Both the position numbers and the translations under genes were made by a program. Under the pieces are notes generated by a model, which saw only the letters and a program-made list of their open reading frames with translations, had not been told where the DNA came from and made no database searches. 64,000 nt of DNA from Podarcis muralis (lineage: Eukaryota), in the NCBI RefSeq assembly GCF_964188315.1, contig NC_135667.1, positions 25,916,001 to 25,980,000 of the forward strand. Reading direction: 5' to 3'. How positions within the stretch are numbered: position 1 is the stretch's first letter; every line of letters begins with the position of its first letter. This document shows positions 1 through 53,707 of this stretch, piece after piece.

Positions 1-2292
1 GTCCGCGACCTCCCCTCTCATTCCAGGCCACCAGAAATCCCTGGCGACTAATTCCACCGTCTTCTCCTTGCCGAAGTGCCCTGCAGTGGGCGCGTCGTGC
101 AGCTGCTGCAGCACCTTGGCGCGAAGTTCGTCTCCCGGCACGTAGATGGCCCCTTTACGGATGAGCAATCCATCTCTTAGCTGGAAACCGTCGGCCGCTG
201 CCTTGCCCCTTTGCACCTCTGCCATCTTTGCTTGCGCGAAGGAGTCCCCCTGCAACGCTCGTCGCACCGCCTCCAGATCCACGGTTGCCGCGGCGCACGC
301 CCACACTGTTGGTGCGAAGATGTGCATGGCGGCCGCTGGCGTTGCGTCCTCCAGATACTGTGGCTTGCGAGAGAGAGCGTCCGCCATGATGTTGGTGTCC
401 CCCGGGACATACTCTATTCGGAAGTCGAAGTTCGCAAAGAACTCAGCCCAACGTATCTGCCTTTGGTTCAGGAACTGTGCCGTGCGCCAGTGCTCTAGGT
501 TCTTGTGGTCCGTGCAAACCTGCACCGTGTGCTTGGCGCCGATCAGAAAGTGCCTCCACGCCTTGAACGCTGCATGAATGGCCAGCAACTCCCTGTCCCA
601 TATGGTGTAGTTCTGCTCGGACTTGCTGAGCTTCCTGGAGTAAAACGCTCCCGGTCGCCACACCCCCTGCGGGTCTTTCTGCAGCAGGACCGCCCCCACG
701 GCTCTGTCCGAGGCGTCTGTCTCCACCCTCATCGGCTTGCTGGGGTTGACATGAAGCAGCTGCTCTTCCGACGCGAAGAGACGCTTGAGTGCCTGAAAGG
801 ACTGTTCCGCCTGCTCTGTCCAAATAAACTTCTTTTTCTTGGAGCTAAGCGTGTCAGTGATGGCCGCCGTCTGCATAGCGAAGCCCTTGATAAACTTGCG
901 ATAGAAGTTCGCAAAGCCGACAAACCGTTGGACCTCCTTCCGGTTGCGCGGGCTCTTCCAATCCAACACCGCTCGAACCTTGGCGCTGTCCATGGCGAGC
1001 CCCTTGTCAGACAGCTTGTAGCCCAGAAAACCCACCTCCGTCACGTCAAATTGGCACTTCTCCAGCTTGGCGTAGAGCCTATGTTGCTTTAGCCTGTTCA
1101 GCACTTCCTTGACGTGTTTGTCATGCTCCTGTTGCGACTCCGAAAAGATCAGGATGTCATCTAAGAAACAGACGCATGTCTTGTAGAGAAGTCCCGCCAA
1201 CACGTGATGCATGAATGCTTGAAAAACGTGGGAGCCATTTTGCAATCCAAAAGGCATAACTCTATATTCGTAGGTCCCCAGTGGCGTGAACATGGCTGTT
1301 TTCCACTCATCTCCCTCCCGCATGCGAATGAGGTTGTACGCCCCTCGCAGGTCCAACTTGGTGAACACTCTGCCCTTCCGCACCTTTGCGAGGAGGTCGT
1401 CAATTCGGGGCATGGGGAAGTCCGACGGCTTAGTCACACTGTTCAAGATCCTGTAATCCACTACGAGTCTCTTTTGGGGCGTATCCCGCTTCTTAACGAA
1501 GAACACCGGGCTGCCTCCCGCCGCCTCGGACTCTCGGATGAAACCGCGCTCCAAATTATGATCTATGAACTCTTTGAGTTCTTGCAGTTCGTCCTCTGAC
1601 ATGGAATACAGTCTCCCCTTAGGCAGCGCCGCCCCTGGCAGCAGGTCAATCTTGCAGTCATATGGCCTGTGAGGGGGTAGCCTGTCTGCCTCCTTCTCGC
1701 AGAAAACTTCCAAAAATTCTGCGTACTTGTGGGGAATCGCTTGCAGCGTGCCTAGCAGCAGCTGTGACTCTTCTTCCTCTCCTTCCTGCCTGGGCACGAT
1801 GCAGTGTTCAGCACAAAAGGAAGAGCCGAAGGTCAGCTGCCTCTGGTACCAAGCCAGCGTTGGGCTGTGCTTGTCCAGCCAACTCATGCCCAACACAATG
1901 GGCGTGTCCGACAATTGAGTGACGTTGAAGCTGATGACTTCTTTGTGATTCCCAAGTCGCATCACCATTGGTGGCGTCTGCTGCACCACTTGCCCCCCTA
2001 GCAGCTCCCTGCCATCCACCGTGACAACCTGCAGGGGCAGTGTGGCCGGCAGCAACTGTATAGCATGCTTGTTGACAAAGTCCTGCCCTATAAAGTCCGC
2101 ATTGCTGCCTGAGTCAATGGTGATTGGCACGTCCAAGGTGATGCCATTGGGCAGCTGGAGCGATGCGGTGAGCCTCACCACTGGTTTGGGCGGGAGGGGG
2201 TTCACGGGCTGTAAAATCTCTGGGGACTGCATCATTAATACGTCTGGCTGGGCCCCAGTGCCTCTTCCTCCAGCCAGACTGCATCGTTTCCC
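1..2292 (-). CDS. pol: Gypsy Pol (protease, reverse transcriptase, RNase H, start of integrase), expressed by -1 frameshift from gag; partial, open at the window edge
   Basis: Manual minus-strand translation found no stop from 2292 to 1. Motifs: IDSG (2107-2118), LPPHRPYD, RLVVDYR, KLDLRGAY, VMPFGL, FLDD (1156-1167), ETDASD, ELLAI, TDHKNL, ADALSRK and LHDAPTAGHFG (first half of the HHCC finger). Absent from the ORF track, probably because it has no stop inside the window. Confidence 0.93.
2220..2292 (-). promoter_or_regulatory. -1 programmed ribosomal frameshift signal: G GGA AAC slippery site + pseudoknot
   Basis: GGGAAAC (2292-2286) lies in the gag frame. A 6-nt spacer is followed by stem 1 GTCTGGCTGG/CCAGCCAGAC (10 bp) and stem 2 CTGGGG/CCCCAG. 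The pol frame is -1 relative to gag. Confidence 0.88.
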
Positions 2293-3308
2293 TGCTGTGG
2301 TTCTCCTTGCTGCGTTGCTGCAGTCGCCATTGCTGAGGCTGCAGTGAGCTTGCGGAGCCTCTGGGGACACTCTTTCGCCATATGCCCTGGCTCCTCACAG
2401 ACGTAACACTTCCTGTTCCCTCTAGGAGGCTTCGCTTTCACTGCTGCTGGTGCTAGGGCTCTGGTTGCTGACTGAGCCCTGGCACCTCCAACCTCCATCG
2501 GTTCAGCTCCTCCTCCTGGCGGAGGCGTGGATTGCGTACGTGCTGCTTCTCTGGGAAAGAAGGAGGAGCCCCTGGCTGGTTCGCGCCCTCCACGCCCTTC
2601 GTCCCTGCTCCACGGACGTCCTTCCAGCCGTACCCCCACTGCCAGCGCCCTCTGCACGACCTCCTGGGTGGTCCGGGGTCTCTCCCCCCTCGCAATTTCA
2701 TCTTTCACAGAGCTGTTTAATCCCTCCCAGAACAGGTCTCTTACAGGAGTCGCATCTCTGTCCCATTCTAGGGCACTGGCCAAGGCGAAAAAGCGGGCAT
2801 GGTACTGCCGTACGCTGGCCCTTCCCTGCTTCAGTCCATGAATCTGTTGCCGAGCAAGATCCACGTCAATGCTTGATAAAAAACACCCATCCATCGCTTT
2901 AATAAAGGCATTCGCATTTTGGAGCGCCGGATCGTTATCCCTCCACAAATTGCGCAGCCATGCCCTGGCATCCCCATGCAAATAGGACATGATGAATCCC
3001 ACTTTCTCCTGCTCATCTCTAAAATCTTTATTCAGCAGTTGCAGTGCACACAGCACGTCTGCTCTAAAATTGGGATACTGTTGCAGGTTCCCATCGAAGT
3101 GAGAGACCAGACCGCCTGTGCGTCTCCCCAAACCAATCCCCTCTGGTTTGGGTGTCTGTTGCCCTTGCTTCGTAAGCACTTCCAACCTGACCTGGAGATC
3201 CCTGTAGGCGGCAGCTGCGTCCTCCTCTCTCTTCCTGGATGCGAGAGCCTCGGCATTCAGCTGTGACACTGCTTCTCTGAGTTCCGCTATTTGCTGTTCA
3301 GCCATCAT
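2235..3308 (-). CDS. gag: Gypsy Gag (N-terminal coiled coil, capsid-like domain, CCHC zinc knuckle), 357 aa
   Basis: FDG...F...KVGFIMSYLHGDARAW capsid motif; LFWEGLNSSVKDEI; EPMEVG motif; CYVCEEPGHMAKEC knuckle. Starts about 80 nt after the PBS. Confidence 0.93.
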   Translation of the reverse strand: MMAEQQIAELREAVSQLNAEALASRKREEDAAAAYRDLQVRLEVLTKQGQQTPKPEGIGLGRRTGGLVSHFDGNLQQYPNFRADVLCALQLLNKDFRDEQEKVGFIMSYLHGDARAWLRNLWRDNDPALQNANAFIKAMDGCFLSSIDVDLARQQIHGLKQGRASVRQYHARFFALASALEWDRDATPVRDLFWEGLNSSVKDEIARGERPRTTQEVVQRALAVGVRLEGRPWSRDEGRGGREPARGSSFFPREAARTQSTPPPGGGAEPMEVGGARAQSATRALAPAAVKAKPPRGNRKCYVCEEPGHMAKECPQRLRKLTAASAMATAATQQGEPQQGNDAVWLEEEALGPSQTY

Positions 3309-3387
3309 GTCGGCTGCCGTTCGTGAGCTCGCTGGTAGGCACCTGCTTCTCTCCTCTCCTCGAGGCTGTATATGCCCACAATTCTTG

Positions 3388-3399
3388 CAGACGGAGCTT
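3388..3399 (-). promoter_or_regulatory. Primer-binding site, self-priming type
   Basis: AAGCTCCGTCTG lies 2 nt inside the LTR boundary and is the exact reverse complement of 3549-3538 (CAGACGGAGCTT) at the predicted TSS. It does not begin with the TGG expected for pairing with a tRNA CCA end. Confidence 0.85.
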
Positions 3400-3401
3400 A
3401 C

Positions 3402-4157
3402 TGTCAGAGTTGCTTCAAGATCCTAGCTCACAGAGGATCACGCTAGCCAACGGTCATTAAGTAAAAGTCTTTATTGAGTTACAGTTTCCATTCTCAAGCT
3501 GTTGCGTGCAACTCTACGTCTAGTAGCTAGATCGGCGAAGCTCCGTCTGAATCTCCGCCCCTTGTACACCAACTTAATATCCTAGCCCTGCTCCACCTTT
3601 TCCGCCTGACTGTTCTTCTCTGGGTCCCTCTGCCCCCCTGGGTCTCTTCCTTCCGGGATTCTTCTGACGCTGACCCCCCGGACCCTCCTGTCTCCTTGCG
3701 CCGGGCTTTAGGACCTGGCTCTCTTTCCGGGCTGCCTACTGCGCCGCCTTCCTGTGCATTTGAACTTGGCGCGCGCGCCCAACCTTCCACCTTCCGTCTA
3801 ACCGTCTCTTCGCTCCCAGATGGAGGTGTGGCCACCCCTGACTCGTGCCCTCCCTCCTGTTGTGAGCTGCCAGCGCTTGCCCCCTGGCTCCCTTCCTCTT
3901 CCCTGTTCTCTGGCGGTGACGCTGGTCCCGATCTCCAACTGCTCTCCTCTGAGTCCCCTCTGGCTCTATCTTCCTGGGGTGCCCCCCTAAACTCCCCCCT
4001 TGCCTTGGCCACTGGTGCTCCTTTCTGTGAATCCTCCGATTCACTGGAAAGACTCGGAGATCTCGGGTCGTCGTCATCACTCATCTTTTCTTCTGCCTCC
4101 TCCCCTTCGCTCTCTGTTTCCTCCCTTGCCCTTGCCTCTGCTCCTGAACCCCTGACA
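3402..4157 (-). repeat. 5' LTR of the Gypsy element (756 bp)
   Basis: TGTCAG...CTGACA terminal inverted repeats. On the minus strand: TATTAAG (3579-3573), predicted TSS about 3549, AATAAA (3475-3470) and a purine-rich U3. Confidence 0.88.
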
Positions 4158-44025: not shown

Positions 44026-44997
44026 CTACCAGCAAACCATGATCATAGCTCCAGTATTTTTAACAAAGACCCGGTTCCTACTCATCAACTTCTTCAAAGC
44101 ATCCTTTACCTCCTTATTCCTTAAGCTATAAATCATTGGATTGAACAGTGGGGTGACTACTGCATAAAAAACTGATGCCACTGTGTCCAGCTTAGAAGGA
44201 GAAGGGGAAATGGGTCTTGTATATATGAAGATAACTGTGGCATAGTAAATCACCACCACAGTAAGGTGTGAGCCACAGGTGGAAAAGGCCTTTTGTCTCC
44301 CACTGGCTGAGGGGATCCTAAGTATGGTTGAGATTATAAAGGTATAGGATACCATGGTGAGCAAGCAGGTGCTGAGGATGACAAAGGAGGCCAGAACTGT
44401 GACTAGGGTAGAGCTGACAAAGGCATTGCCACATGACCGCCTCAACAGGGGCCCAGCATCACAAAAGAAATGGTGAATCTCCTTAGGCTCACAGAATGAG
44501 AGCTGGGAGATGAGGACAATGGGGAGCAAAGGAGCTAGAAATCCACCCACCCAGGCTGCTGTCACCAGCCATGTAGTTACTTGCAGAGTCATAAGAGTTG
44601 GATAATGAAGAGGACGGCAGATGGCCAAGTAGCGGTCATAAGCCATAGTAGCCAGGAGGAAGCATTCAGTGGAGCCCAAGGCAAAGAAAAGATAGAGCTG
44701 GGCAATGCAACCCGCCACAGTGATTGTACTCCCACCAGCCAAGAAACTTTCCAGCATCTTCGGCACAGTGGAGGTGGTATACCAGATCTCCATGAAGGAG
44801 AAGTTGCCTAGGAAGTAGTACATGGGTCGCTGCAGTTTTGGGTTTGCCTTAATGACTGAGATGATGACGATGTTGGCAGTAACAGTGAGAACATAGGTGG
44901 CCAAGGCTAGGGTGAAGAACAGCATAGAAAGCTGTGGAGAAGCTGAGAACCCCAAGATGACAAACGCCTTTACCACACTCCTGTTAGAAGATTCCAT
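44026..44997 (-). CDS. Olfactory receptor, family 6/11-like, intact (323 aa from MESSNRS)
   Basis: NRS, LQRPMYYFL, MEIWY, MAYDRYLAIC, KAFSTCGSH, PLFNPMIYSLRN; CTAACCAG acceptor-like motif upstream. Confidence 0.92.
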   Translation of the reverse strand: MESSNRSVVKAFVILGFSASPQLSMLFFTLALATYVLTVTANIVIISVIKANPKLQRPMYYFLGNFSFMEIWYTTSTVPKMLESFLAGGSTITVAGCIAQLYLFFALGSTECFLLATMAYDRYLAICRPLHYPTLMTLQVTTWLVTAAWVGGFLAPLLPIVLISQLSFCEPKEIHHFFCDAGPLLRRSCGNAFVSSTLVTVLASFVILSTCLLTMVSYTFIISTILRIPSASGRQKAFSTCGSHLTVVVIYYATVIFIYTRPISPSPSKLDTVASVFYAVVTPLFNPMIYSLRNKEVKDALKKLMSRNRVFVKNTGAMIMVCW

Positions 44998-45289
44998 GTC
45001 GACATTCTCTCTGGTTAGCAAAGTTGTGGAGAAGGAGTGACAAAGGGAACAAAAAGGGGAAAGATTAATGTGCTATATTTAAGAACATTTATTTATATTT
45101 GTTATTAGGAATGTCAGAAATGTGATGAATGTGATGAACAGGGATGGAGAACCAAATGTATCCTTCCATACTTCTCTATCTATATCCCTAAATGTTGAGG
45201 AATGTACATCCATATACACTTTATACTTCATGTAGTTGATGGGAAAAACTAATGTAACATAGGGGCATCCATGATGAGCATGATTGCCA

Positions 45290-45990
45290 ACTCTAGATCA
45301 TGGCAAATTCCTGCAAGAGTACATGTGCAGGTATTTCCCCAGTCTTGGCAGGCTGTATGGATATGACTAACTTAACACCATTAATTGCAATGGGTCTTCT
45401 CTGTTTATTCAAATCTTTTTCCATGTCATGTGGGAAAGCGTGTTCTCCTTCATGGAGAGCAAGTGTTGCGGTGGGGGCCGCCAGGACACTCCAAAGTTGG
45501 GGGTGGGCTAATTGTTCGTTGGTCACTGATGCGATTGGGGCTTCCCTTATTGTTGGGAAGAAGTTAATGTTGCCATTTGTTGATTGACAGCCAGAAATGC
45601 TAAAACTCCTTGCACGAGGCTAGGGCTTCCTCTTTTCGACCGTGCATCGGATTGCCCGTCCCCCCCCTCCCTAGAATTAGGGTTGTTCGCTTTGACCTTG
45701 CTATGCCTGTCATGGGGTCGTCTGCTCTTGGGGCAGGGGCCCGGTAGGAATTTTGTCCATCTGGCTGATTGGCTGGGGCCATTTGGTTTTTGCCTAAAGG
45801 TAAAGGTAAAGGTACCCCTGCCCGTACGGGCCAGTCTTGCCAGACTCTAGGGTTGTGCGCCCATCTCACTCAAGAATCCTCACAACTTGTAAGGCTACGG
45901 TTAGGCATTGGTTTATGGTTTGGTTGGTTGAGGGGCATGGATTGGTTGTGCCTGCCCCTCTAATGCTGCTGCCCTATAGGACGAAAAATA
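45290..45990 (+). repeat. Unclassified LTR-like repeat family copy, with a nested SINE tail
   Basis: GGGGCCCGGTAGGAATTT, TGGTTTTTGCCT...TCACAACTT and GGTTAGGCATTGG are shared with 27670-27830. Confidence 0.45.
45796..45875 (-). mobile_element. Sauria SINE / Bov-B-related 3' tail fragment
   Basis: AAAGGTAAAGGTAAAGGTACCCCTG...GACTCTAGGGTTGTGCGCCCATCTC is the reverse complement of the (ACCTTT)n-tailed squamate SINE end. It interrupts the host repeat relative to the 27725-27765 copy. Confidence 0.75.
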
Positions 45991-45991
45991 C

Positions 45992-46025
<34 letters not shown>

Positions 46026-46079
46026 GCTGTAACTCTTTGTATTAATGTGTACATATTAATCCATGCACACACACATAGA

Positions 46080-46523
46080 TGTTCAGTTTCTGTTAATTGG
46101 TTCTCGTGGGAAACTTGCAGATTCTAGCTTCGCACAATTAACTCAGGCTGGTGTCAATTTACTCTTGGCAGAAAGCCCAGGTCTGCTTGACCTAGAAACT
46201 ACTCACTCTGATTGGTTAACGACCAGCACTCAACTCTGTTATCAAGGGTTTGCTAGCTCAGTTTGAAGTGAGGTGTGTTAGGAGTAGAAGTGCTGTGTAT
46301 GGGTTTGAGAGAGAGAGAAAGAGAGGATTTATTTTGTTGTATTTGTATGCAGAAACTCTGCTGGTTTTATTTTCTCCTTTTTTAATAAATCCTGTAAATA
46401 GTTATTCTGAGTCTAGCTGACTTGTCATTACTGCCGCAACTAGCTTCCTCGCTGTGCAGGAAAACTCTGCTACGTTTGGGCTAAAGCCAATAGGGCTATG
46501 CCTGACACTTCAAAGTTCCATGA
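46080..46523 (+). repeat. Copia 5' LTR
   Basis: Direct repeat of 50775-51218; AATAAA at 46384-46389; begins TG, ends GA. Confidence 0.95.
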
Positions 46524-46533
46524 GGTTATGGGC
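46524..46533 (+). promoter_or_regulatory. Copia PBS complementary to the anticodon-arm region of initiator tRNA-Met (half-tRNA priming type)
   Basis: GGTTATGGGC is the reverse complement of GCCCATAACC in vertebrate tRNA-iMet; same type as the Drosophila copia PBS GGTTATGGGCCCAG. Confidence 0.85.
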
Positions 46534-46758
46534 ATTGTGCTGCCAGCCTGAGTTGCGGTGGTGTCAGCATCAACGGCGTTGGTTCCAGTAGTTCCAGAGG
46601 TTGTTGTTCCTGGCTGGTTCCTGACCGTGGTGAGCTGGTGACGCAGTGGACACAAGGACAACAGCTGCAGCGTGTGAGTGCTGGGTGCTGTGGTTCCTGT
46701 TCTCTCTCTCGGTGGTCGTGAGTAGCTGGTTCCGGATTCCAGGGACATCGCTCTCAAG

Positions 46759-49700
46759 ATGGCCTCACAACCAGTTCAGATGGCTTTTGAGCGTCTGAAT
46801 GACTCCAATTACTTGCTGTGGTCGGAACGCATGCAGGCAGTGCTGCAGAGGGATCGTCTCTGGCAAGTGGTGAGTAAGTTTCCTGCGAAGCCTGATGATG
46901 AAGACCTCGATAAAGACCAAAGAGCAAGGGCCACAATTGTCTTGGGGCTGGAAGATTCCCAGTTGCCGTATGTGAGGGGAATCAAGACAGCTAGAGGTGT
47001 GTGGCAAGCACTTAAAGAACTCCATGTGCGTGAGACAGCGGTTTCCAAGCTGTTCATTCGCAAGGCATTGTACAAGGCAATGTTACAGCCTGGGGTTACA
47101 ATGCAGGAACACCTACACAGTTTACAGTTAAAGTTTACTGCACTACAGGAAAGAGACTGTGCGTTAGACCAGCAGGAGAAGGTGGCTATTATTTTAAGTT
47201 CTCTCCCGGAAAGCTGGGATAATTTAGTTTTGTCTCTAGAAGGCATGCAGGAGCATGATTTATCAGTCAGTTACGTTACTGGGCGTTTGATTGAAGAATG
47301 GCAGAAGAGGCAAGAAAGGTCGTTGGCTGCAGAGGCTTCTACAGACGGGCGGTTTGGAAGGAGTTCTCATGCCGTGCCAGAGGTGAAGCAAAAGCAGCGT
47401 ACCGGTGAGGAGTCAGCATTTGCTGTTAGGCGTTGTTTCCAATGTGGGTCTTCAGCGCATCTAAAACGACAATGTCCGGAGTTGGTCAAGTCTCAGTTGC
47501 TGGTGCAGGAGCAGAGACGAGATCAGCAGCAGCAGCAGCGTAAAAGGAAATTCTTCAAACGAAAACAGTCGGCTCAGCTGGTGACCGGCGAGGTCAAGAT
47601 TGCTGATGAGAAACAAGCGGTCTGGGTGGTCGATTCGGGAGCATCTCGCCACATCGTAAATTCAGATGAATTGTTTGTTTCCAAGAACTCAGCACAGCGC
47701 AGCCAGGTGGCTCTAGCAGACGGAAGTACTTCCGAAGTGATTTCGGGGGGTGCAGTTTTTGTTCCTTGTCTTCGTGAATGCCTGCAAAATGTACTTTGTG
47801 TGCCTTCATTAAGGAGCAATCTGATGTCTGTAGATTGTTTGCTAAAAGCTGGGTTTAAAGTGTATTTTGAAGGAGACAGTTGCATCATTAAGAAGGCTGG
47901 TGAGATTTTAGGCACTGCTAAGTCAGAGGGAGGCTTGTTTTGGCTTAAAGCAGGTTTTCAAGTTGCAGCAGTAGTCAGTAAATCTCAGCCTGCAGTGAAT
48001 AACAAAGCTATACATGACAACTGTGTGCACTTATTGCATAGGAAAATGGGGCATGCTTGCTGGAAAAGTGTACTAAAAATGTCTGAATTGGCTGATGGGG
48101 GTAATTTAAAGAGTTGTAACAAGTACCTTGATTGTAATGTTTGTAAAAAGGTTAAAACCCACAGAGTCTCTTACCCCAGAAGTGACAGAGTTAGTGAGGC
48201 ACCGCTACAGCTGGTTCACATGGACGTAATTGGTCCATTTGCTGTAAGCAGGGGTGGATCGCGTTTTTCACTAACAATTGTGGATGACGCCGCGCGTTAT
48301 TCTTGGGTTTTTCCCATGAAGAATAAGGGTGACGTGTTCACTAAGTTTAAAGGCTGGGTGGCATCTGTGGAAAGATTTCTGTCCATTAAACTCAAAAGGA
48401 TTCAGACGGATAGAGGTGGCGAATTTATGTCAAATGCCTTTAAAGATTGGTTACAAAAGCGTGGCATTGGGCATAGGAAAACGAACGTTTTTCCCCCAGA
48501 GGAGAATGGCGTTGCAGAGCGAAAAAACAGATCTTTACAAGATATGATGTTTGCCATGCTTGATGATGCTGATTTGCCCATGTCTTATTGGGGGGAGAGC
48601 ATGCTCACCGCGTGTTATCTCCAAAACAGGCTCTTTCATCAAACAATAGGTACAACCCCGTACTTTAAATTGTTTCAGAAAAAACCCAAAATTGACCATT
48701 TGCATGTGTTTGGATCAAAAGCCTGGGTATTAATTCCGAAACAAATGAGGAAGAAGGGAGATCCTAAGACCAAACAGTTAGTGTTTGTGGGTTACCAGGA
48801 GCTGGGAAAAGGTTTCCGCTTTGCTGAAGGGACAAATGGCATTGTGATCTCCAGGAATGCCAGTTTTTGTGAACATAGTGGCTGGGAGAGACTACATGCC
48901 AATACTGAGGTTTGGTTTGAACCTTCCCAGGAGCTTCATGACTCTGAAAGTGGACACAGAGAATCAGAGTCTGAGGGGGAGGAAAGTTCAGATAAGAGCT
49001 CTCAAGAAAGTGGAGTTAGCCAAAGACCAGTTGCTAAGCAACAAAAGAGAGGTCGTAGTTCTGAGGAGGAAAGTGGGTCAGAAGAAAAATTTTCTCCCAG
49101 AAGATCTAAAAGACAAAACAAAGGAGTGCCTCCGGTGCGTTTTTCTCCAGATACTGCAAATGTGTTTAGTGTAATTGCAGAACCCAAGAGTTTTCAGGAG
49201 GTGTTAAAGTTACCAAAAGAGGAGGCAGAGCGCTGGAAACAGGCAATGGAGGAAGAGATGTCCTCTCTGAATGAGCACAAGGTTTTTACACCAGTGGCAG
49301 CGCCTGAGGGGGCAAAGATTGTAGGCTGCAGGTGGGTGTACAAACTTAAACCTCTGGTGACAGGAGAGTACAAGTACAAAGCTCGTTTAGTGGCCCAAGG
49401 ATACTCTCAGAGGCCTGGAAAAGATTATGACGAGACTTTTTCCCCTACTGCTAAGGGGGACAGTGTAAGGCTGATTTTAACGCTTGGAGCAAAGAGAAAA
49501 CTCCTGTTAAACCATTTTGACATTCAGACTGCATATTTACATGCATCAATATCAGAAGACCTGTATCTAGCTGAACCGCCTGGTTATGAGACAGGTTCCA
49601 ATAGAGTGTTAAAATTAAACAAAGCTCTATACGGTCTCAAACAGGCTGCAAGATCTTGGAACAAGTGTTTCCATGAGGCCTTAGTGTCATTTGGTTTCAA

Positions 49701-50721
49701 GCAGAGTACAGCTGACAATTGTGTTTATGTACGTGGTACAGGCAGTGATCAAGAGTTTTGTCTGATTTATGTAGATGATGTTTTGTATGCTTGCAAAACA
49801 GATAAACAAACTAAAAGGTTTGCCAAACAATTGTCCAGTAAGTTCAAAGTGAAAGACTTAGGCCCGGTTAGGACATATCTAGGGTTGGAAGTGTGCTGGG
49901 CCCAAGATGGCAGCTGTCTAATTAGTCAGCAGAACAAAGTTAAACAACTACTGACTACATACAGGATGCAGGATTGCAAAGGGGCAGTGGTGCCTATGGA
50001 TCCAGGTTTCATAAAAACACTTCATATAGATGAGAGTCCTGAATTTGAACATCCTGATGTATATCATTCTGTAATTGGAAGTTTATTGTATCTAGCACAG
50101 TGGTCCAGACCTGATATTAGCTACGCAGTAGGCATATTAAGTAGATTGGTCTCAAAACCCACACTAAATGCCTGGAAAGGGGTAAAACAAGTTCTGAGGT
50201 ATCTCAAACAGACAATTGGCTATATGTTACAATTAAATTCTTCAGAGGATGAAATGTTGAGTTGCTACTGTGATAGTGACTGGGGAAATTTGCCGGATAG
50301 AAAATCTGTCACAGGACTAGTCATAATGGTCGGTGGAGCTTTAATCAGCTGGCGGTCACGCAAGCAAGACGTTGTAAGTGTGTCATCAACGGAATCAGAG
50401 TACGCCGCATTGAGTGAATTGTGCAATGAGGTGATTTATTTCAAGCATTTGTTAGCAGATTTAAATGTAAATTGTGGAGAACCAGTACAAGTTTACATTG
50501 ATAATCAAGCTTGTATAACCTTAAGTAAAACAGAGGGTTTCAAATCACGTTCCAAACATATCTCTGTAAAATACCAAAATGTACGTTGCTGTGTACAAGA
50601 CAATGTAATCACATGTACATATGTATCAAGTGAAGAAAATGTAGCAGATGTGTTAACTAAACCATTGGCAAAGATAAAGAACAAGCGAATGTGCAAGGGT
50701 TTAGGTTTGCTGGAAAAATGA
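46759..50721 (+). CDS. Copia Gag-Pol polyprotein, intact, 1320 aa (Gag, CCHC, protease, integrase, RT, RNase H)
   Basis: CFQCGSSAHLKRQC, WVVDSGAS, HRKMGH..C..C, LVHMDV, IQTDRGGEF, ENGVAERKNR, KARLVAQG, LNKALYGLKQA, IYVDD, YCDSDW, IDNQ, VADVLTKPL; IN precedes RT (Copia order). Confidence 0.97.
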   Translation: MASQPVQMAFERLNDSNYLLWSERMQAVLQRDRLWQVVSKFPAKPDDEDLDKDQRARATIVLGLEDSQLPYVRGIKTARGVWQALKELHVRETAVSKLFIRKALYKAMLQPGVTMQEHLHSLQLKFTALQERDCALDQQEKVAIILSSLPESWDNLVLSLEGMQEHDLSVSYVTGRLIEEWQKRQERSLAAEASTDGRFGRSSHAVPEVKQKQRTGEESAFAVRRCFQCGSSAHLKRQCPELVKSQLLVQEQRRDQQQQQRKRKFFKRKQSAQLVTGEVKIADEKQAVWVVDSGASRHIVNSDELFVSKNSAQRSQVALADGSTSEVISGGAVFVPCLRECLQNVLCVPSLRSNLMSVDCLLKAGFKVYFEGDSCIIKKAGEILGTAKSEGGLFWLKAGFQVAAVVSKSQPAVNNKAIHDNCVHLLHRKMGHACWKSVLKMSELADGGNLKSCNKYLDCNVCKKVKTHRVSYPRSDRVSEAPLQLVHMDVIGPFAVSRGGSRFSLTIVDDAARYSWVFPMKNKGDVFTKFKGWVASVERFLSIKLKRIQTDRGGEFMSNAFKDWLQKRGIGHRKTNVFPPEENGVAERKNRSLQDMMFAMLDDADLPMSYWGESMLTACYLQNRLFHQTIGTTPYFKLFQKKPKIDHLHVFGSKAWVLIPKQMRKKGDPKTKQLVFVGYQELGKGFRFAEGTNGIVISRNASFCEHSGWERLHANTEVWFEPSQELHDSESGHRESESEGEESSDKSSQESGVSQRPVAKQQKRGRSSEEESGSEEKFSPRRSKRQNKGVPPVRFSPDTANVFSVIAEPKSFQEVLKLPKEEAERWKQAMEEEMSSLNEHKVFTPVAAPEGAKIVGCRWVYKLKPLVTGEYKYKARLVAQGYSQRPGKDYDETFSPTAKGDSVRLILTLGAKRKLLLNHFDIQTAYLHASISEDLYLAEPPGYETGSNRVLKLNKALYGLKQAARSWNKCFHEALVSFGFKQSTADNCVYVRGTGSDQEFCLIYVDDVLYACKTDKQTKRFAKQLSSKFKVKDLGPVRTYLGLEVCWAQDGSCLISQQNKVKQLLTTYRMQDCKGAVVPMDPGFIKTLHIDESPEFEHPDVYHSVIGSLLYLAQWSRPDISYAVGILSRLVSKPTLNAWKGVKQVLRYLKQTIGYMLQLNSSEDEMLSCYCDSDWGNLPDRKSVTGLVIMVGGALISWRSRKQDVVSVSSTESEYAALSELCNEVIYFKHLLADLNVNCGEPVQVYIDNQACITLSKTEGFKSRSKHISVKYQNVRCCVQDNVITCTYVSSEENVADVLTKPLAKIKNKRMCKGLGLLEK

Positions 50722-50774
50722 TCTCCTACATAGGTGTATTTGATGTTAATTGTTCAGCAGAATCTGTGAGGGGG

Positions 50775-51218
50775 TGTTCAGTTTCTGTTAATTGGTTCTC
50801 GTGGGAAACTTGCAGATTCTAGCTTCGCACAATTAACTCAGGCTGGTGTCAATTTACTCTTGGCAGAAAGCCCAGGTCTGCTTGACCTAGAAACTACTCA
50901 CTCTGATTGGTTAACGACCAGCACTCAACTCTGTTATCAAGGGTTTGCTAGCTCAGTTTGAAGTGAGGTGTGTTAGGAGTAGAAGTGCTGTGTATGGGTT
51001 TGAGAGAGAGAGAAAGAGAGGATTTATTTTGTTGTATTTGTATGCAGAAACTCTGCTGGTTTTATTTTCTCCTTTTTTAATAAATCCTGTAAATAGTTAT
51101 TCTGAGTCTAGCTGACTTGTCATTACTGCCGCAACTAGCTTCCTCGCTGTGCAGGAAAACTCTGCTACGTTTGGGCTAAAGCCAATAGGGCTATGCCTGA
51201 CACTTCAAAGTTCCATGA
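50775..51218 (+). repeat. Copia 3' LTR
   Basis: Identical by eye to 46080-46523; preceded by the PPT and followed by the TSD. Confidence 0.95.
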
Positions 51219-52762
51219 ATAGAAACACAGACACCTATATCTACCAATCTACATATCTACATCTGTTTAGTTCTAAGGATTTATTAGATAGACAGATACG
51301 CAGACATTGTAAAAAGATGATATAAGAATATATGGTAAATTCATCAATAACATATGTATTCACCTGAATGAAGGGTAATCCACAGGGCTCACACAAGCTG
51401 CCAGTTATCCAGGAGGCATCAATACTATTCAGGCTAATTGGTAGAATGAAATCCTATGAAAATGGCAGACTAATATAGATTATTGCCAAATGAAACAATG
51501 ATACTGAATCCTTTCATTAAAAGGAATGAGTTTTCAAGAGGCAATTCATAACTCAACCACTTACATCTTTGCCCTTCTTATCTCATCTATCCTTGTGTCT
51601 AAAATTTCCTGCACCATGTTATCCCACAAAAAACATAAGACGGGAAACTGTACAGCCTGAGAAACAGCTTTATGTTGTTTGGTGCTGCTATTTCAAGAGT
51701 CACTTCACACACACAGGAGACCTAATCTATATCTCCGAGTATTAGATAACCTTTGGGATATGTTTAATAACAATTAATTATTTACATATTCTCTCTCTTT
51801 CTCTCCTGCCAATGGCCTAGATCATAATTCTTGTTTACCTAACATAGAGGTGGAAAATTGTTCCATGCACTTTTTAGGATGTGGAAGAATGAACAGATTA
51901 GTAGGCAAAGGAGATCCAAATTGGCCTCACCATTTGGTAGCCTACAGGTCCACAAATTTTCAGTGTTTATTCTAAAACAAACAAAGAAAAGTATGCCATT
52001 AGTCCTTTAAATTATGCAGCTGTAAACAAAGGTCACCCTGTGTGCTCTGGCTAATGTTTTCAAAGGCACTGGACTACTGACAACCACTAGGGGAAGGTAT
52101 TCAAGTATTAAATATATTTTAAAAATATTTTAAATGAACCATAAACTAAAGGCAGATTAAAATACCTGATAGAGTCTACATGTCTGAATAGGTTTGCCAA
52201 ATAAAAAATGTTTTTAGCCACCATGGAAAATAATACAGTGGAAGGGGCTGCCTGATGTCAGTAGATAGGGAGTTTCATTGTTTGGTTGCTGCCATACCTA
52301 AGATAAATTTCTTACAAGTGCTGAATGACTATATGTGACACTTTAAATTTTGGCAGTTCTGCAGCTTGAAGTGGTAAAGTGTACATCTATGGGGTAAAGC
52401 AATCTAGCAGGTAAACTAGTCCCAAAGTATTAAGGACATTCTTCCTATTTATTTCATTATAAATATACCGTACACTGCTCCATTGTAGAAAAACTCAATG
52501 CAGTTTATGTACTTATAGTAACAGCCTGAAGTTGATCCAGTAGCAGACTGTCAACCAGTGCAGTTTTCTGAGCACAGATGTTAAGTGCCAAAGGCACATG
52601 ACTTTCTGCCTTCCAGCACATGTTTTCCTTGCCCACACTGCTGTTTGGTTTGGGGCATGTCTTCCTTGTTATATTTTAATAAATATAACCCTGTCTGAAG
52701 TCCTCATTTGAAGCGTGGTGCAAGTAAACGTATGCCCTTCAGATGCACTTCAGATGTAGATA

Positions 52763-53707
52763 TTAGCCCATTCTCATTGATGAAGGTCCATGCACTGATT
52801 TTCTGAAGGCATCTTTGAATTCCTGATTCCTCAGGCAGTAGATGACTGGATTGAGAAGTGGTGTGAGGACGGTGTAGACAACAGACACCAGCTTGTTGGC
52901 ATAAAAAGAGGTGAGGGCTCTTGGCCGGGCATAGATGAAAATAGTGGTAGAATAGAAAATTGTGACTACCAGAAGGTGTGAAGCACAGGTGGAAAAGGCT
53001 TTGTGCTTCCCTTTGGCTGAAGGTATGTGGAGAATTGTGGAGATGATGCAGATGTAAGAGGTGATTGTTACAGAGAGTGGGCCAATGAGAATGAGTAAGG
53101 CAAGAAGGAAATCAATGAGCTCAGCCAATGACATATCAGTGCAGGCCAAGTTGAGAAGTGGGGAAACATCACAGAAGAAGTGGTTGATAACGTTGGGTCC
53201 ACAGTAGCTCAAGCGTGAGATGAAGATGATCTTCCCCATGGCGATGAAAATGCCACTCAACCAGGAACCAGCTGCTAGACGAATGCATAAGTTTTGACTC
53301 ATAATAGCTGGATAGCGCAATGGGTTGCAGATGGCAACATAGCGATCATAAGCCATAACAGTTAGAAGGACACACTCAGTGCATGCCAAAGCCAGGAAGA
53401 AGTACAGCTGGGCCATGCAACCTATGAAAGAGATTTCTCTTTTCTCTGCCACAAAGCCAGCAAGCATTTTGGGGACCGTGACGGAGACATACCAGATCTC
53501 CAGGAAAGAAAGATTACTCAGGAAGAGATACATAGGCTTATGAAGATTGATGTTCATCCAGATTAAGGCAATGATCACCACATTCTCCATTATTGTCAGT
53601 GTGTAAGCAACCAGAAAAGTGGTGAATAACAAGAGCTGCAGCCTCAGATCTCCAGGAAAACCAACCAGGATGAATTCATTCACTTGTGTCCAGTTTGCCA
53701 GTTGCAT
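52763..53707 (-). CDS. Olfactory receptor family 6 (OR6B/6A-like), intact (314 aa)
   Basis: [46 protein letters not shown]. Confidence 0.95.

What the first reader, a model, noticed from the sequence alone, without database searches (positions are those of the whole stretch)
46075..51223. Fully intact, very recent Ty1/Copia insertion in a reptile OR cluster
Seen: two 444-bp LTRs with no difference found by eye, a perfect TSD, PBS, PPT and an uninterrupted 1320-aa ORF with all catalytic motifs. Known: Copia elements are essentially absent from mammals and birds and are a minor component in squamates. Inference: a currently or recently active amniote Copia, likely insertion-polymorphic; horizontal acquisition is possible.
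Basis: partly seen in the sequence, partly recalled or inferred. Interest (0 to 1): 0.75.

Follow-up and report, generated by a model that had tools for sequence, protein, structure and literature searches.

The report
Young, still-segregating Copia retrotransposon in wall lizard
A complete, undamaged Copia-type jumping gene sits between two smell-receptor genes of a Podarcis wall lizard, and three other sequenced lizards still carry the uninterrupted site, so it jumped recently; active Copia elements are already known in lizards and snakes, so this is a clean example of a known kind.

Summary
The LTRs (46080-46523, 50775-51218) are 444/444 identical, flanked by a 5-bp target duplication, ATAGA. 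One 1320-aa ORF runs gag, protease, integrase, RT, RNase H, with every catalytic motif present.

New here:
- **Empty site:** contigs of three DNA runs from three studies join 46074 directly to 51219 at single-copy depth. This is the exact empty site with one ATAGA, so the insertion is not fixed.
- **Copy number:** internal pieces have about 110-280 times the flank's word depth, a rough sign of a family with over 100 near-identical copies.
- **Selection:** this copy differs from the dominant family sequence at 28 ORF sites, and 23 are synonymous (p = 3e-8).
- **Other intact copies:** two more 1320-aa polyproteins (98-99% identical) exist in public assemblies, plus Podarcis lilfordi fragments at 96-97%.

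The host is a Podarcis. Its receptor genes are 99-99.7% identical to P. muralis and P. raffonei.

Horizontal transfer gains no support. The nearest relatives outside the family are 36-41% identical. One RNA run is nearly silent.

Copia activity in squamates is already published (corn snake), and this scan had already noted other young Copia copies elsewhere in this genome. I rate it a new member of a known kind, of modest interest.

The parts
46075..46079 (.). left copy of the 5-bp target-site duplication, ATAGA
   Evidence: the empty-site joint has a 5-letter ambiguity
46080..46523 (+). 5' LTR, 444 bp, ends TG...GA
   Evidence: 444/444 identical to the 3' LTR
46384..46389 (+). AATAAA inside the LTR (same motif at 51079-51084 in the 3' LTR); probable polyadenylation signal near the R/U5 border
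   Evidence: one search gives the position; the function is inferred
46524..46533 (+). primer-binding site GGTTATGGGC, directly after the LTR; read as the complement of the anticodon arm of initiator tRNA-Met (half-tRNA priming as in Drosophila copia)
   Evidence: for the sequence; the tRNA match is from memory; half-tRNA priming of copia is cited from PMC5371799
46534..46758 (+). untranslated leader
46759..50721 (+). single gag-pol ORF, 1320 aa plus stop
46831..47322 (+). copia-type gag (capsid) domain, aa 25-188
   Evidence: Retrotran_gag_2, E 1.7e-33; matches the solved Drosophila Copia VLP protein 8vvw, E 6e-18
47434..47475 (+). CCHC zinc knuckle, aa 226-239
47623..47856 (+). aspartic protease domain, aa 289-366, with DSGA at 47632-47643
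   Evidence: (Pol_BBD)
48013..48522 (+). integrase: HHCC zinc finger (48013-48144) and DD35E core (D489, D551, E588)
   Evidence: (rve), and (Ty1 and PFV integrase structures)
48673..48885 (+). integrase C-terminal SH3-like domain, aa 639-709
49279..49998 (+). Ty1/copia-type reverse transcriptase, aa 841-1080, with YVDD at 49768-49779
   Evidence: (RVT_2, E 5.7e-68)
50269..50661 (+). RNase H region with D, E, D, D motifs, aa 1171-1301
   Evidence: motifs read from the sequence; no Pfam model hit
50768..50774 (+). polypurine tract GAGGGGG, abutting the 3' LTR
50775..51218 (+). 3' LTR, 444 bp
51219..51223 (.). right copy of the target-site duplication, ATAGA

Best explanation
This is a real, full-length, coding-intact autonomous Ty1/Copia LTR retrotransposon. 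It integrated recently into the spacer between two intact olfactory-receptor genes of a Podarcis wall lizard, and it is still polymorphic in the species.

Shown here:
- the complete anatomy of the element;
- the exact empty allele in three other DNA data sets;
- a family of roughly a hundred or more near-identical copies;
- other intact polyproteins of the same family;
- purifying selection on the polyprotein between sublineages.

Inferred mechanism (the standard Copia cycle):
1. Transcription starts in the 5' LTR and is polyadenylated after the AATAAA in the 3' LTR.
2. The RNA is translated into one gag-PR-IN-RT-RH polyprotein, which its own protease cuts.
3. Minus-strand synthesis is primed at the 10-nt PBS by the 5' half of initiator tRNA-Met, and plus-strand synthesis at the GAGGGGG tract.
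4. Integration uses a 5-bp staggered cut, which produced the ATAGA duplication.

That the family is still transposing today is likely but not shown.
For: - Identical 444-bp LTRs and the ATAGA duplication.
- Open 1320-aa ORF with all Pfam domains in Copia order and every catalytic motif. The gag part matches the solved Drosophila Copia capsid, and the integrase matches Ty1 integrase.
- Joint 46074->51219, skipping 5144 bases with a 5-letter ambiguity, in one contig each of runs X1, X7 and X12 (three samples, three studies). Its depth of 11.9, 11 and 13.5 equals the single-copy 3' flank, and 38 letters lie on the shorter side.
- Single internal contigs have word depth 1276-3085 against 11-13.5 in the flank (table 8).
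- Of 28 ORF differences from the dominant contigs, 23 are synonymous against 31% expected (binomial p = 3e-8).
- Two further intact 1320-aa polyproteins, 98.1% and 99.2% identical, and two P. lilfordi gag fragments at 96-97%.
- The neighbouring receptor ORFs are intact.
Against: - Contigs show presence, not absence. I cannot say whether the three individuals also carry the filled allele, nor whether one of them is the assembled animal.
- Word depth is only a rough proxy for copy number.
- The one raw RNA run laid (X23, tissue unknown) has almost no reads on the element. The few reads that overlap a diagnostic site carry other copies' letters there.
- The LTR ends in GA rather than the usual CA.
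- The tRNA match of the PBS was not checked against a tool-derived tRNA.
- No long reads were available to confirm the two LTRs independently.
Confidence: 0.88

Rival explanations
1. The insertion is young and polymorphic, but the family is no longer transposing. The copy would be a leftover of a burst that ended up to a few million years ago and is now silenced.
For: - Zero differences in 444 bp only bounds the age to under about 1.4-4.2 Myr, for assumed rates of 2.4e-9 to 0.8e-9 per site per year.
- RNA run X23 is nearly empty on the element.
Against: - The empty allele is present in all three other data sets, which suggests the insertion is not at high frequency.
- More than 100 copies share exact 31-letter words over pieces up to 643 bases.
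- At least three distinct intact polyproteins exist.
- Earlier unchecked notes of this scan list further copies with identical LTRs in this genome.
- One somatic or unknown tissue says little about the germ line.
Confidence: 0.3
2. Assembly artefact: the identical LTRs come from collapse or from polishing with reads of other copies, or the element was placed here wrongly.
For: - The family is highly repeated, so reads map to many places.
- The LTRs show no substitution against the dominant LTR contigs, while the interior differs at about 0.7%.
Against: - A misplacement would not create an exact 5-bp duplication of the very bases that occur once in the empty allele.
- Polishing towards the family majority would also have erased the 30 internal private letters, which are still there.
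Confidence: 0.04
3. The empty-site contigs come from a duplicated paralogous stretch of the receptor cluster, not from an allele of this site.
For: Olfactory-receptor clusters are rich in tandem duplicates.
Against: - In each run the 3' flank (51250-51640) is covered by one contig only. Its depth equals the summed depth, and it has 1 other letter in 422 (tables 2 and 8).
- There is no second copy of the flank, and no other copy of it in the window (one search found no further matches to the element either).
Confidence: 0.04
4. The family entered lacertid lizards by horizontal transfer from a non-vertebrate donor.
For: - In the two protein searches nothing lies between family members (96% or more) and 41% identity.
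- In a quick tree the family is a long isolated branch (length 1.72) inside a clade of nematode and insect elements.
Against: - No candidate donor is closer than 36-41%, and the family is not nested in any arthropod group.
- The family is shared with P. lilfordi.
- Copia is held to be ancestral in vertebrates and retained in reptiles (PMC4350176).
- Vertebrate Copia proteins are almost absent from the collections searched, so the gap probably reflects sampling.
Confidence: 0.08

Closest known systems
Corn snake Copia LTR retrotransposon (5832 bp), cause of the amelanistic OCA2 and Stripe CLCN2 alleles (PMC4657000, PMC11948899)
   Same: A squamate Copia with gag, integrase, RT and RNase H. It has about 85 near-identical copies and recent lineage-restricted amplification, and its insertions segregate within a species.
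   Different: The snake insertions disrupt genes and give phenotypes, whereas this one lies between genes.
Drosophila melanogaster copia
   Same: - Single gag-pol ORF with the order PR-IN-RT-RH and a 5-bp target duplication.
- The gag matches the solved Copia VLP protein 8vvw (E 6e-18).
- The PBS is read as pairing with the anticodon region of initiator tRNA-Met, i.e. half-tRNA priming (PMC5371799).
   Different: - Insect relatives found here are only about 35-41% identical in protein.
- The LTR is 444 bp and ends TG...GA.
- Whether gag is made from a spliced RNA, as in copia, is unknown.
Anolis carolinensis Copia families of Repbase (for example Copia-6, named in PMC4657000)
   Same: Copia families in a lizard genome. 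They show that the superfamily persists in squamates.
Saccharomyces Ty1
   Same: The integrase core matches the solved Ty1 integrase 7z0h (E 1.4e-12). It shares the 5-bp duplication and the same domain order.
   Different: Ty1 makes pol by +1 frameshifting and uses the 3' end of the whole tRNA-iMet. Here there is one continuous ORF and a PBS of the half-tRNA type.

Membership tests
Ty1/Copia LTR retrotransposons (Pseudoviridae) | Two direct long terminal repeats around a coding interior | tested here: met
   444/444 identical LTRs at 46080-46523 and 50775-51218
Ty1/Copia LTR retrotransposons (Pseudoviridae) | Domain order gag, protease, integrase, RT, RNase H, with integrase before RT | tested here: met
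   Pfam positions are gag 25-188, PR 289-366, IN 480-573, RT 841-1080. RNase H motifs lie at 1171-1301.
Ty1/Copia LTR retrotransposons (Pseudoviridae) | Copia-type RT and gag sequence families | tested here: met
   RVT_2 scores 229.6 bits (cut-off 31.6) and Retrotran_gag_2 scores 116 bits (cut-off 27). The gag matches the Copia VLP protein structure.
Ty1/Copia LTR retrotransposons (Pseudoviridae) | 5-bp target-site duplication | tested here: met
   ATAGA on both sides. It occurs once in the empty allele.
Ty1/Copia LTR retrotransposons (Pseudoviridae) | PBS complementary to initiator tRNA-Met, next to the 5' LTR | tested here: inconclusive
   GGTTATGGGC at 46524-46533 fits the anticodon arm of tRNA-iMet as I recall it. 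No tool-derived tRNA was at hand, and there is no tRNA gene in the window.
Ty1/Copia LTR retrotransposons (Pseudoviridae) | Typical but not defining: LTR termini TG...CA | tested here: not met
   The LTR starts TG but ends GA. No other register of the insertion gives CA.
Ty1/Copia LTR retrotransposons (Pseudoviridae) | No env-like third ORF | tested here: met
   There is no further plus-strand ORF of 100 aa or more outside gag-pol, and only 53 bases lie between the stop and the 3' LTR.
Recently active, segregating TE family | The empty allele exists in the species | tested here: met
   Joint 46074->51219 in X1, X7 and X12 at single-copy depth
Recently active, segregating TE family | Many near-identical copies and other intact coding copies | tested here: met
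   Contig word depth is about 110-280 times the flank, a rough figure. P0243 and P0244 are intact 1320-aa proteins at 98.1% and 99.2% identity.
Recently active, segregating TE family | Purifying selection on the coding sequence between sublineages | tested here: met
   23 synonymous against 5 non-synonymous differences, p = 3e-8
Recently active, segregating TE family | Transcripts of the element | tested here: inconclusive
   X23 has depth 1.4 or less, and the few reads that overlap a diagnostic site show other copies' letters.
Horizontally transferred TE | Higher identity to elements of distant hosts than host divergence allows | tested here: not met
   The best relatives outside the family are 36% identical (full length) and 41% (RT-RNase H).
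Horizontally transferred TE | Patchy distribution and a tree that conflicts with the host tree | tested here: inconclusive
   The quick tree has no vertebrate comparators. The family is present in P. lilfordi. Other lacertids could not be searched.

The most novel reading that the evidence does not exclude
This Copia family, an isolated long branch with no relative above 41% identity in the collections searched, entered the lacertid lineage by horizontal transfer from an unsampled donor, perhaps an invertebrate. It is now in an ongoing burst in Podarcis, with copy number differing about two-fold between individuals.
Probability: 0.08. Interest if true: 0.6.

Novelty: new member of a known kind. 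Interest (0 to 1): 0.3.

Why it matters
It adds a documented case, with exact filled and empty alleles, of a Copia element segregating within an amniote species. Birds and mammals have lost this superfamily. Wall lizards are a widely studied evolutionary model, so a coding-intact family with over 100 near-identical copies is a likely source of structural variation, including in the olfactory-receptor clusters. It could also supply markers for population studies. It does not change the picture: Copia activity in squamates is already published for the corn snake, and Copia families are catalogued for Anolis.

Tried and rejected
I could not see which samples hold the 4.5-kb contigs encoding P0243 and P0244, nor the organisms of the nearest 36% relatives, nor other genomic copies.
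- The full-length protein search found nothing above 36%. That blank came from the length window: the family's cluster has a 461-aa representative, which only the RT-RNase H query found.
- No tRNA gene lies in the window to test the PBS against.
- The Rfam scan gave only sub-threshold mir-297 hits (33 and 29 bits against a gathering score of 90) on both strands of the CA/TA-rich simple sequence at 45993-46080. I rejected them as low-complexity matches.
- RNA run X23 gave no support for expression of this copy. That is not evidence of silence.
- The careful tree did not finish in the time allowed, so the quick tree was used.
- There is no other copy, solo LTR or protein fragment of the family in the window.
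- I did not run the large representative protein search, structure prediction or complex prediction.
- No family consensus or altered sequence was built.
Full report
**1. The observation**

The repeat finder found one direct repeat pair in 45000-52500. A script extended it to exactly 46080-46523 and 50775-51218, 444 of 444 bases identical.

The five bases before the 5' LTR (46075-46079) and after the 3' LTR (51219-51223) are both ATAGA. The 30-base LTR start occurs twice in the window and 0 times in shuffles.

The LTR begins TG but ends GA. No register of the insertion gives the usual CA.

Directly after the 5' LTR comes GGTTATGGGC (46524-46533). I read it as the complement of the anticodon arm of initiator tRNA-Met, that is, half-tRNA priming as described for Drosophila copia (PMC5371799). 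The tRNA sequence is recalled from memory and was not tested with a tool. The window has no tRNA gene.

GAGGGGG (50768-50774) abuts the 3' LTR. AATAAA lies at 46384 in the LTR.

**2. Coding capacity**

One ORF, 46759-50721, is open for 1320 codons. Pfam matches, all well above their cut-offs:

| Pfam family | Residues |
|---|---|
| DUF4219 and Retrotran_gag_2 | 13-188 |
| Pol_BBD (protease) | 289-366 |
| rve (integrase core) | 480-573 |
| SH3_retrovirus | 639-709 |
| RVT_2 (reverse transcriptase) | 841-1080 |

A script located every catalytic motif:
- CCHC knuckle at 226-239.
- DSGA at 292.
- HHCC at 419-462.
- Integrase D489, D551 and E588, with 35 residues between the last two.
- YVDD at 1004.
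- RNase H D1173, E1212, D1248 and D1297.

Among solved structures, the gag part matches the Drosophila Copia VLP protein (8vvw, E 6e-18). The integrase matches Ty1 integrase (7z0h) and PFV integrase. The order PR-IN-RT-RH, the 5-bp duplication and the absence of a third ORF make this a Ty1/Copia element.

**3. Host and surroundings**

Seven of the eight other long ORFs tested are olfactory receptors (7tm_4, E 1e-50 to 1e-58). One, at 2235-3308 on the minus strand, is a Gypsy-type gag.

Exact look-ups place three receptor proteins in clusters with named orthologues. They are 99.0-99.7% identical to Podarcis muralis and 98.4-99.7% to P. raffonei. They are 96.5-97.8% identical to Lacerta agilis and Zootoca vivipara. 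The host is a Podarcis wall lizard; the species was not determined.

The element lies about 1.06 kb from the 5' end of the ORF 44026-45021 (minus strand). It lies about 1.5 kb beyond the stop of the ORF 52763-53707 (minus strand). Both ORFs are intact, so no coding sequence is disrupted. The target lies at the edge of a CA/TA-rich simple sequence.

**4. Is the site fixed?**

Twenty runs of one organism, from eight studies, hold 60-68% of the sampled words of 45650-51640. I laid three DNA contig sets from three studies (X1, X7, X12) and one raw RNA run (X23) on that stretch.

In each DNA run one contig joins 46074 to 51219. It skips 5144 bases, which is the 5139-base element plus one ATAGA, with a 5-letter ambiguity. 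At least 38 letters lie on the shorter side.

- The joint's depth is 11.9, 11 and 13.5. This equals the depth of the single contig that covers the 3' flank 51250-51640.
- That flank contig differs from the window at 1 of 422 positions.

This is the precise pre-integration allele. It cannot arise from LTR-LTR recombination, which would leave a solo LTR. The insertion is therefore not fixed.

Because the flank is represented by only one contig per run, a paralogous source is unlikely. Contigs cannot show absence, so I cannot say whether these animals also carry the filled allele, nor whether one of them is the assembled animal. In that case the assembled animal would be heterozygous.

**5. The family**

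Single contigs inside the element have mean word depth as follows (table 8):

| Run | Internal contig depth | Flank depth | Ratio |
|---|---|---|---|
| X1 | 1276-1606 | 11.9 | about 110-135 |
| X7 | 2650-3085 | 11 | about 240-280 |
| X12 | 1642-2530 | 13.5 | about 120-190 |

The tool warns that depth is no copy number, so I use these only as an order of magnitude. They point to more than a hundred copies that share exact 31-letter words over pieces up to 643 bases.

The dominant contigs differ from this copy at 30 internal sites (about 0.7% of 4251 bases), mostly transitions, and at none of the 444 LTR positions. Of the 28 sites inside the ORF, 23 are synonymous, against 31% expected for the observed mix of transitions and transversions (binomial p = 3e-8). 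All sixteen differences in the RT-RNase H part are synonymous.

So this copy belongs to a rarer sublineage. That sublineage diverged from the main one while the polyprotein stayed under selection, the pattern expected when differences arise in replicating lineages rather than by decay.

**6. Relatives**

The full-length search found nothing above 36% identity. The RT-RNase H query found one cluster at 98%, and then nothing above 41%. That cluster holds:
- two further intact 1320-aa polyproteins on Logan contigs of 4.5 kb, 98.1% and 99.2% identical to this one;
- two annotated Podarcis lilfordi gag fragments (CAI5789482.1 and CAI5797341.1), 96-97% identical.

Contigs of 4.5 kb are far longer than the 643 bases or less seen in the three genomic contig sets laid (table 8 lists the longest pieces). 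They may therefore be transcripts.

In a quick maximum-likelihood tree the lizard family is a long isolated branch (length 1.72). It sits inside a well-supported clade (99) with nematode and insect elements, and it is not nested in any of them.

No candidate donor exists in the data, and vertebrate Copia comparators are missing. Horizontal transfer is neither supported nor excluded. Published work treats Copia as ancestral in vertebrates, lost in birds and mammals and kept in reptiles (PMC4350176).

**7. Expression**

In X23, with 12% of the run read, the element has depth of at most 1.4. The few reads that overlap a diagnostic site carry the dominant family's letters there, not this copy's. 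There is no evidence that this copy is transcribed in that sample, whose tissue is unknown.

**8. Age**

Zero differences in 444 bp gives a 95% upper bound of about 1.4 to 4.2 Myr. That assumes rates of 2.4e-9 to 0.8e-9 per site per year; the rates are assumptions. The presence of the empty allele in all three other data sets points to a much younger event, but I cannot put a number on it.

**9. Artefact rivals**

A misplaced or collapsed element would not be flanked by a duplication of the exact five bases that occur once in the empty allele. Polishing towards the family majority would also have removed the 30 private internal letters.

The lack of any LTR substitution against the majority is mildly odd. 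About 3 would be expected at the internal rate, so P is about 0.04. It could reflect chance or template switching between co-packaged RNAs.

**10. What is known**

A 5832-bp Copia element causes two colour mutations in corn snakes. The two inserts differ by one base. It has 85 copies and is restricted to Pantherophis and Pituophis (PMC4657000, PMC11948899). That paper also cites Anolis Copia families in Repbase.

This scan had already noted other young Copia copies in this genome, both autonomous and RT-less. Those notes are unchecked leads.

The present element is a new member of a known kind. The empty-site evidence and the selection signal are the additions made here.

**11. Limits kept**

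Copies were only compared and described.

Noticed in passing
window 45650-46049 (core about 45796-45875): An extremely abundant repeat sits just 5' of the insertion. Summed word depth is 2e5 to 3e6 against 11-13 for single-copy DNA. In RNA run X23 it has hundreds of reads on both strands and sharp loose ends at 45795-45802 and 45871-45875. It is probably a SINE-like or Penelope-related fragment.
   Followed up: no
window 46522-46523 and 51217-51218: The LTR ends in GA, not the near-universal CA. The empty-site joint fixes the register, so this is not a boundary error.
   Followed up: partly
window 46080-46523 versus 46524-50774: This copy has 30 substitutions against the dominant family contigs in the interior, but none in either LTR. 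About 3 would be expected (P about 0.04). It may be chance, or a recombinant origin by template switching.
   Followed up: no
window 46850-50550, runs X1, X7, X12: Depth of element contigs relative to the flank differs about 2.3-fold between individuals (about 110-135 in X1, about 240-280 in X7). This could be a real difference in copy number between animals or lineages, or a library effect.
   Followed up: no
window 49364-49603: In run X7 one contig (depth 95) skips 238 bases inside the RT region. This would be a frame-breaking internal-deletion variant of the family. Only 25 letters lie on the shorter side, so it is weak. Earlier notes of the scan mention RT-less Copia copies in this genome.
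   Followed up: no
window 2235-3308 (minus strand), within the GC-rich stretch 1-4000: A 357-aa ORF with Retrotrans_gag, Ty3 capsid and zinc-knuckle matches. It is part of a Ty3/Gypsy element already noted by the scan.
   Followed up: no
proteins P0243 and P0244 (Logan contigs of 4543 and 4559 bases): These are two more intact 1320-aa polyproteins of the same family, on contigs long enough to be near full-length transcripts.
   Followed up: partly
window 45993-46080: CA/TA-rich simple sequence gives sub-threshold mir-297 matches on both strands (33 and 29 bits against a gathering score of 90). The Copia target site lies at its 3' edge.
   Followed up: yes
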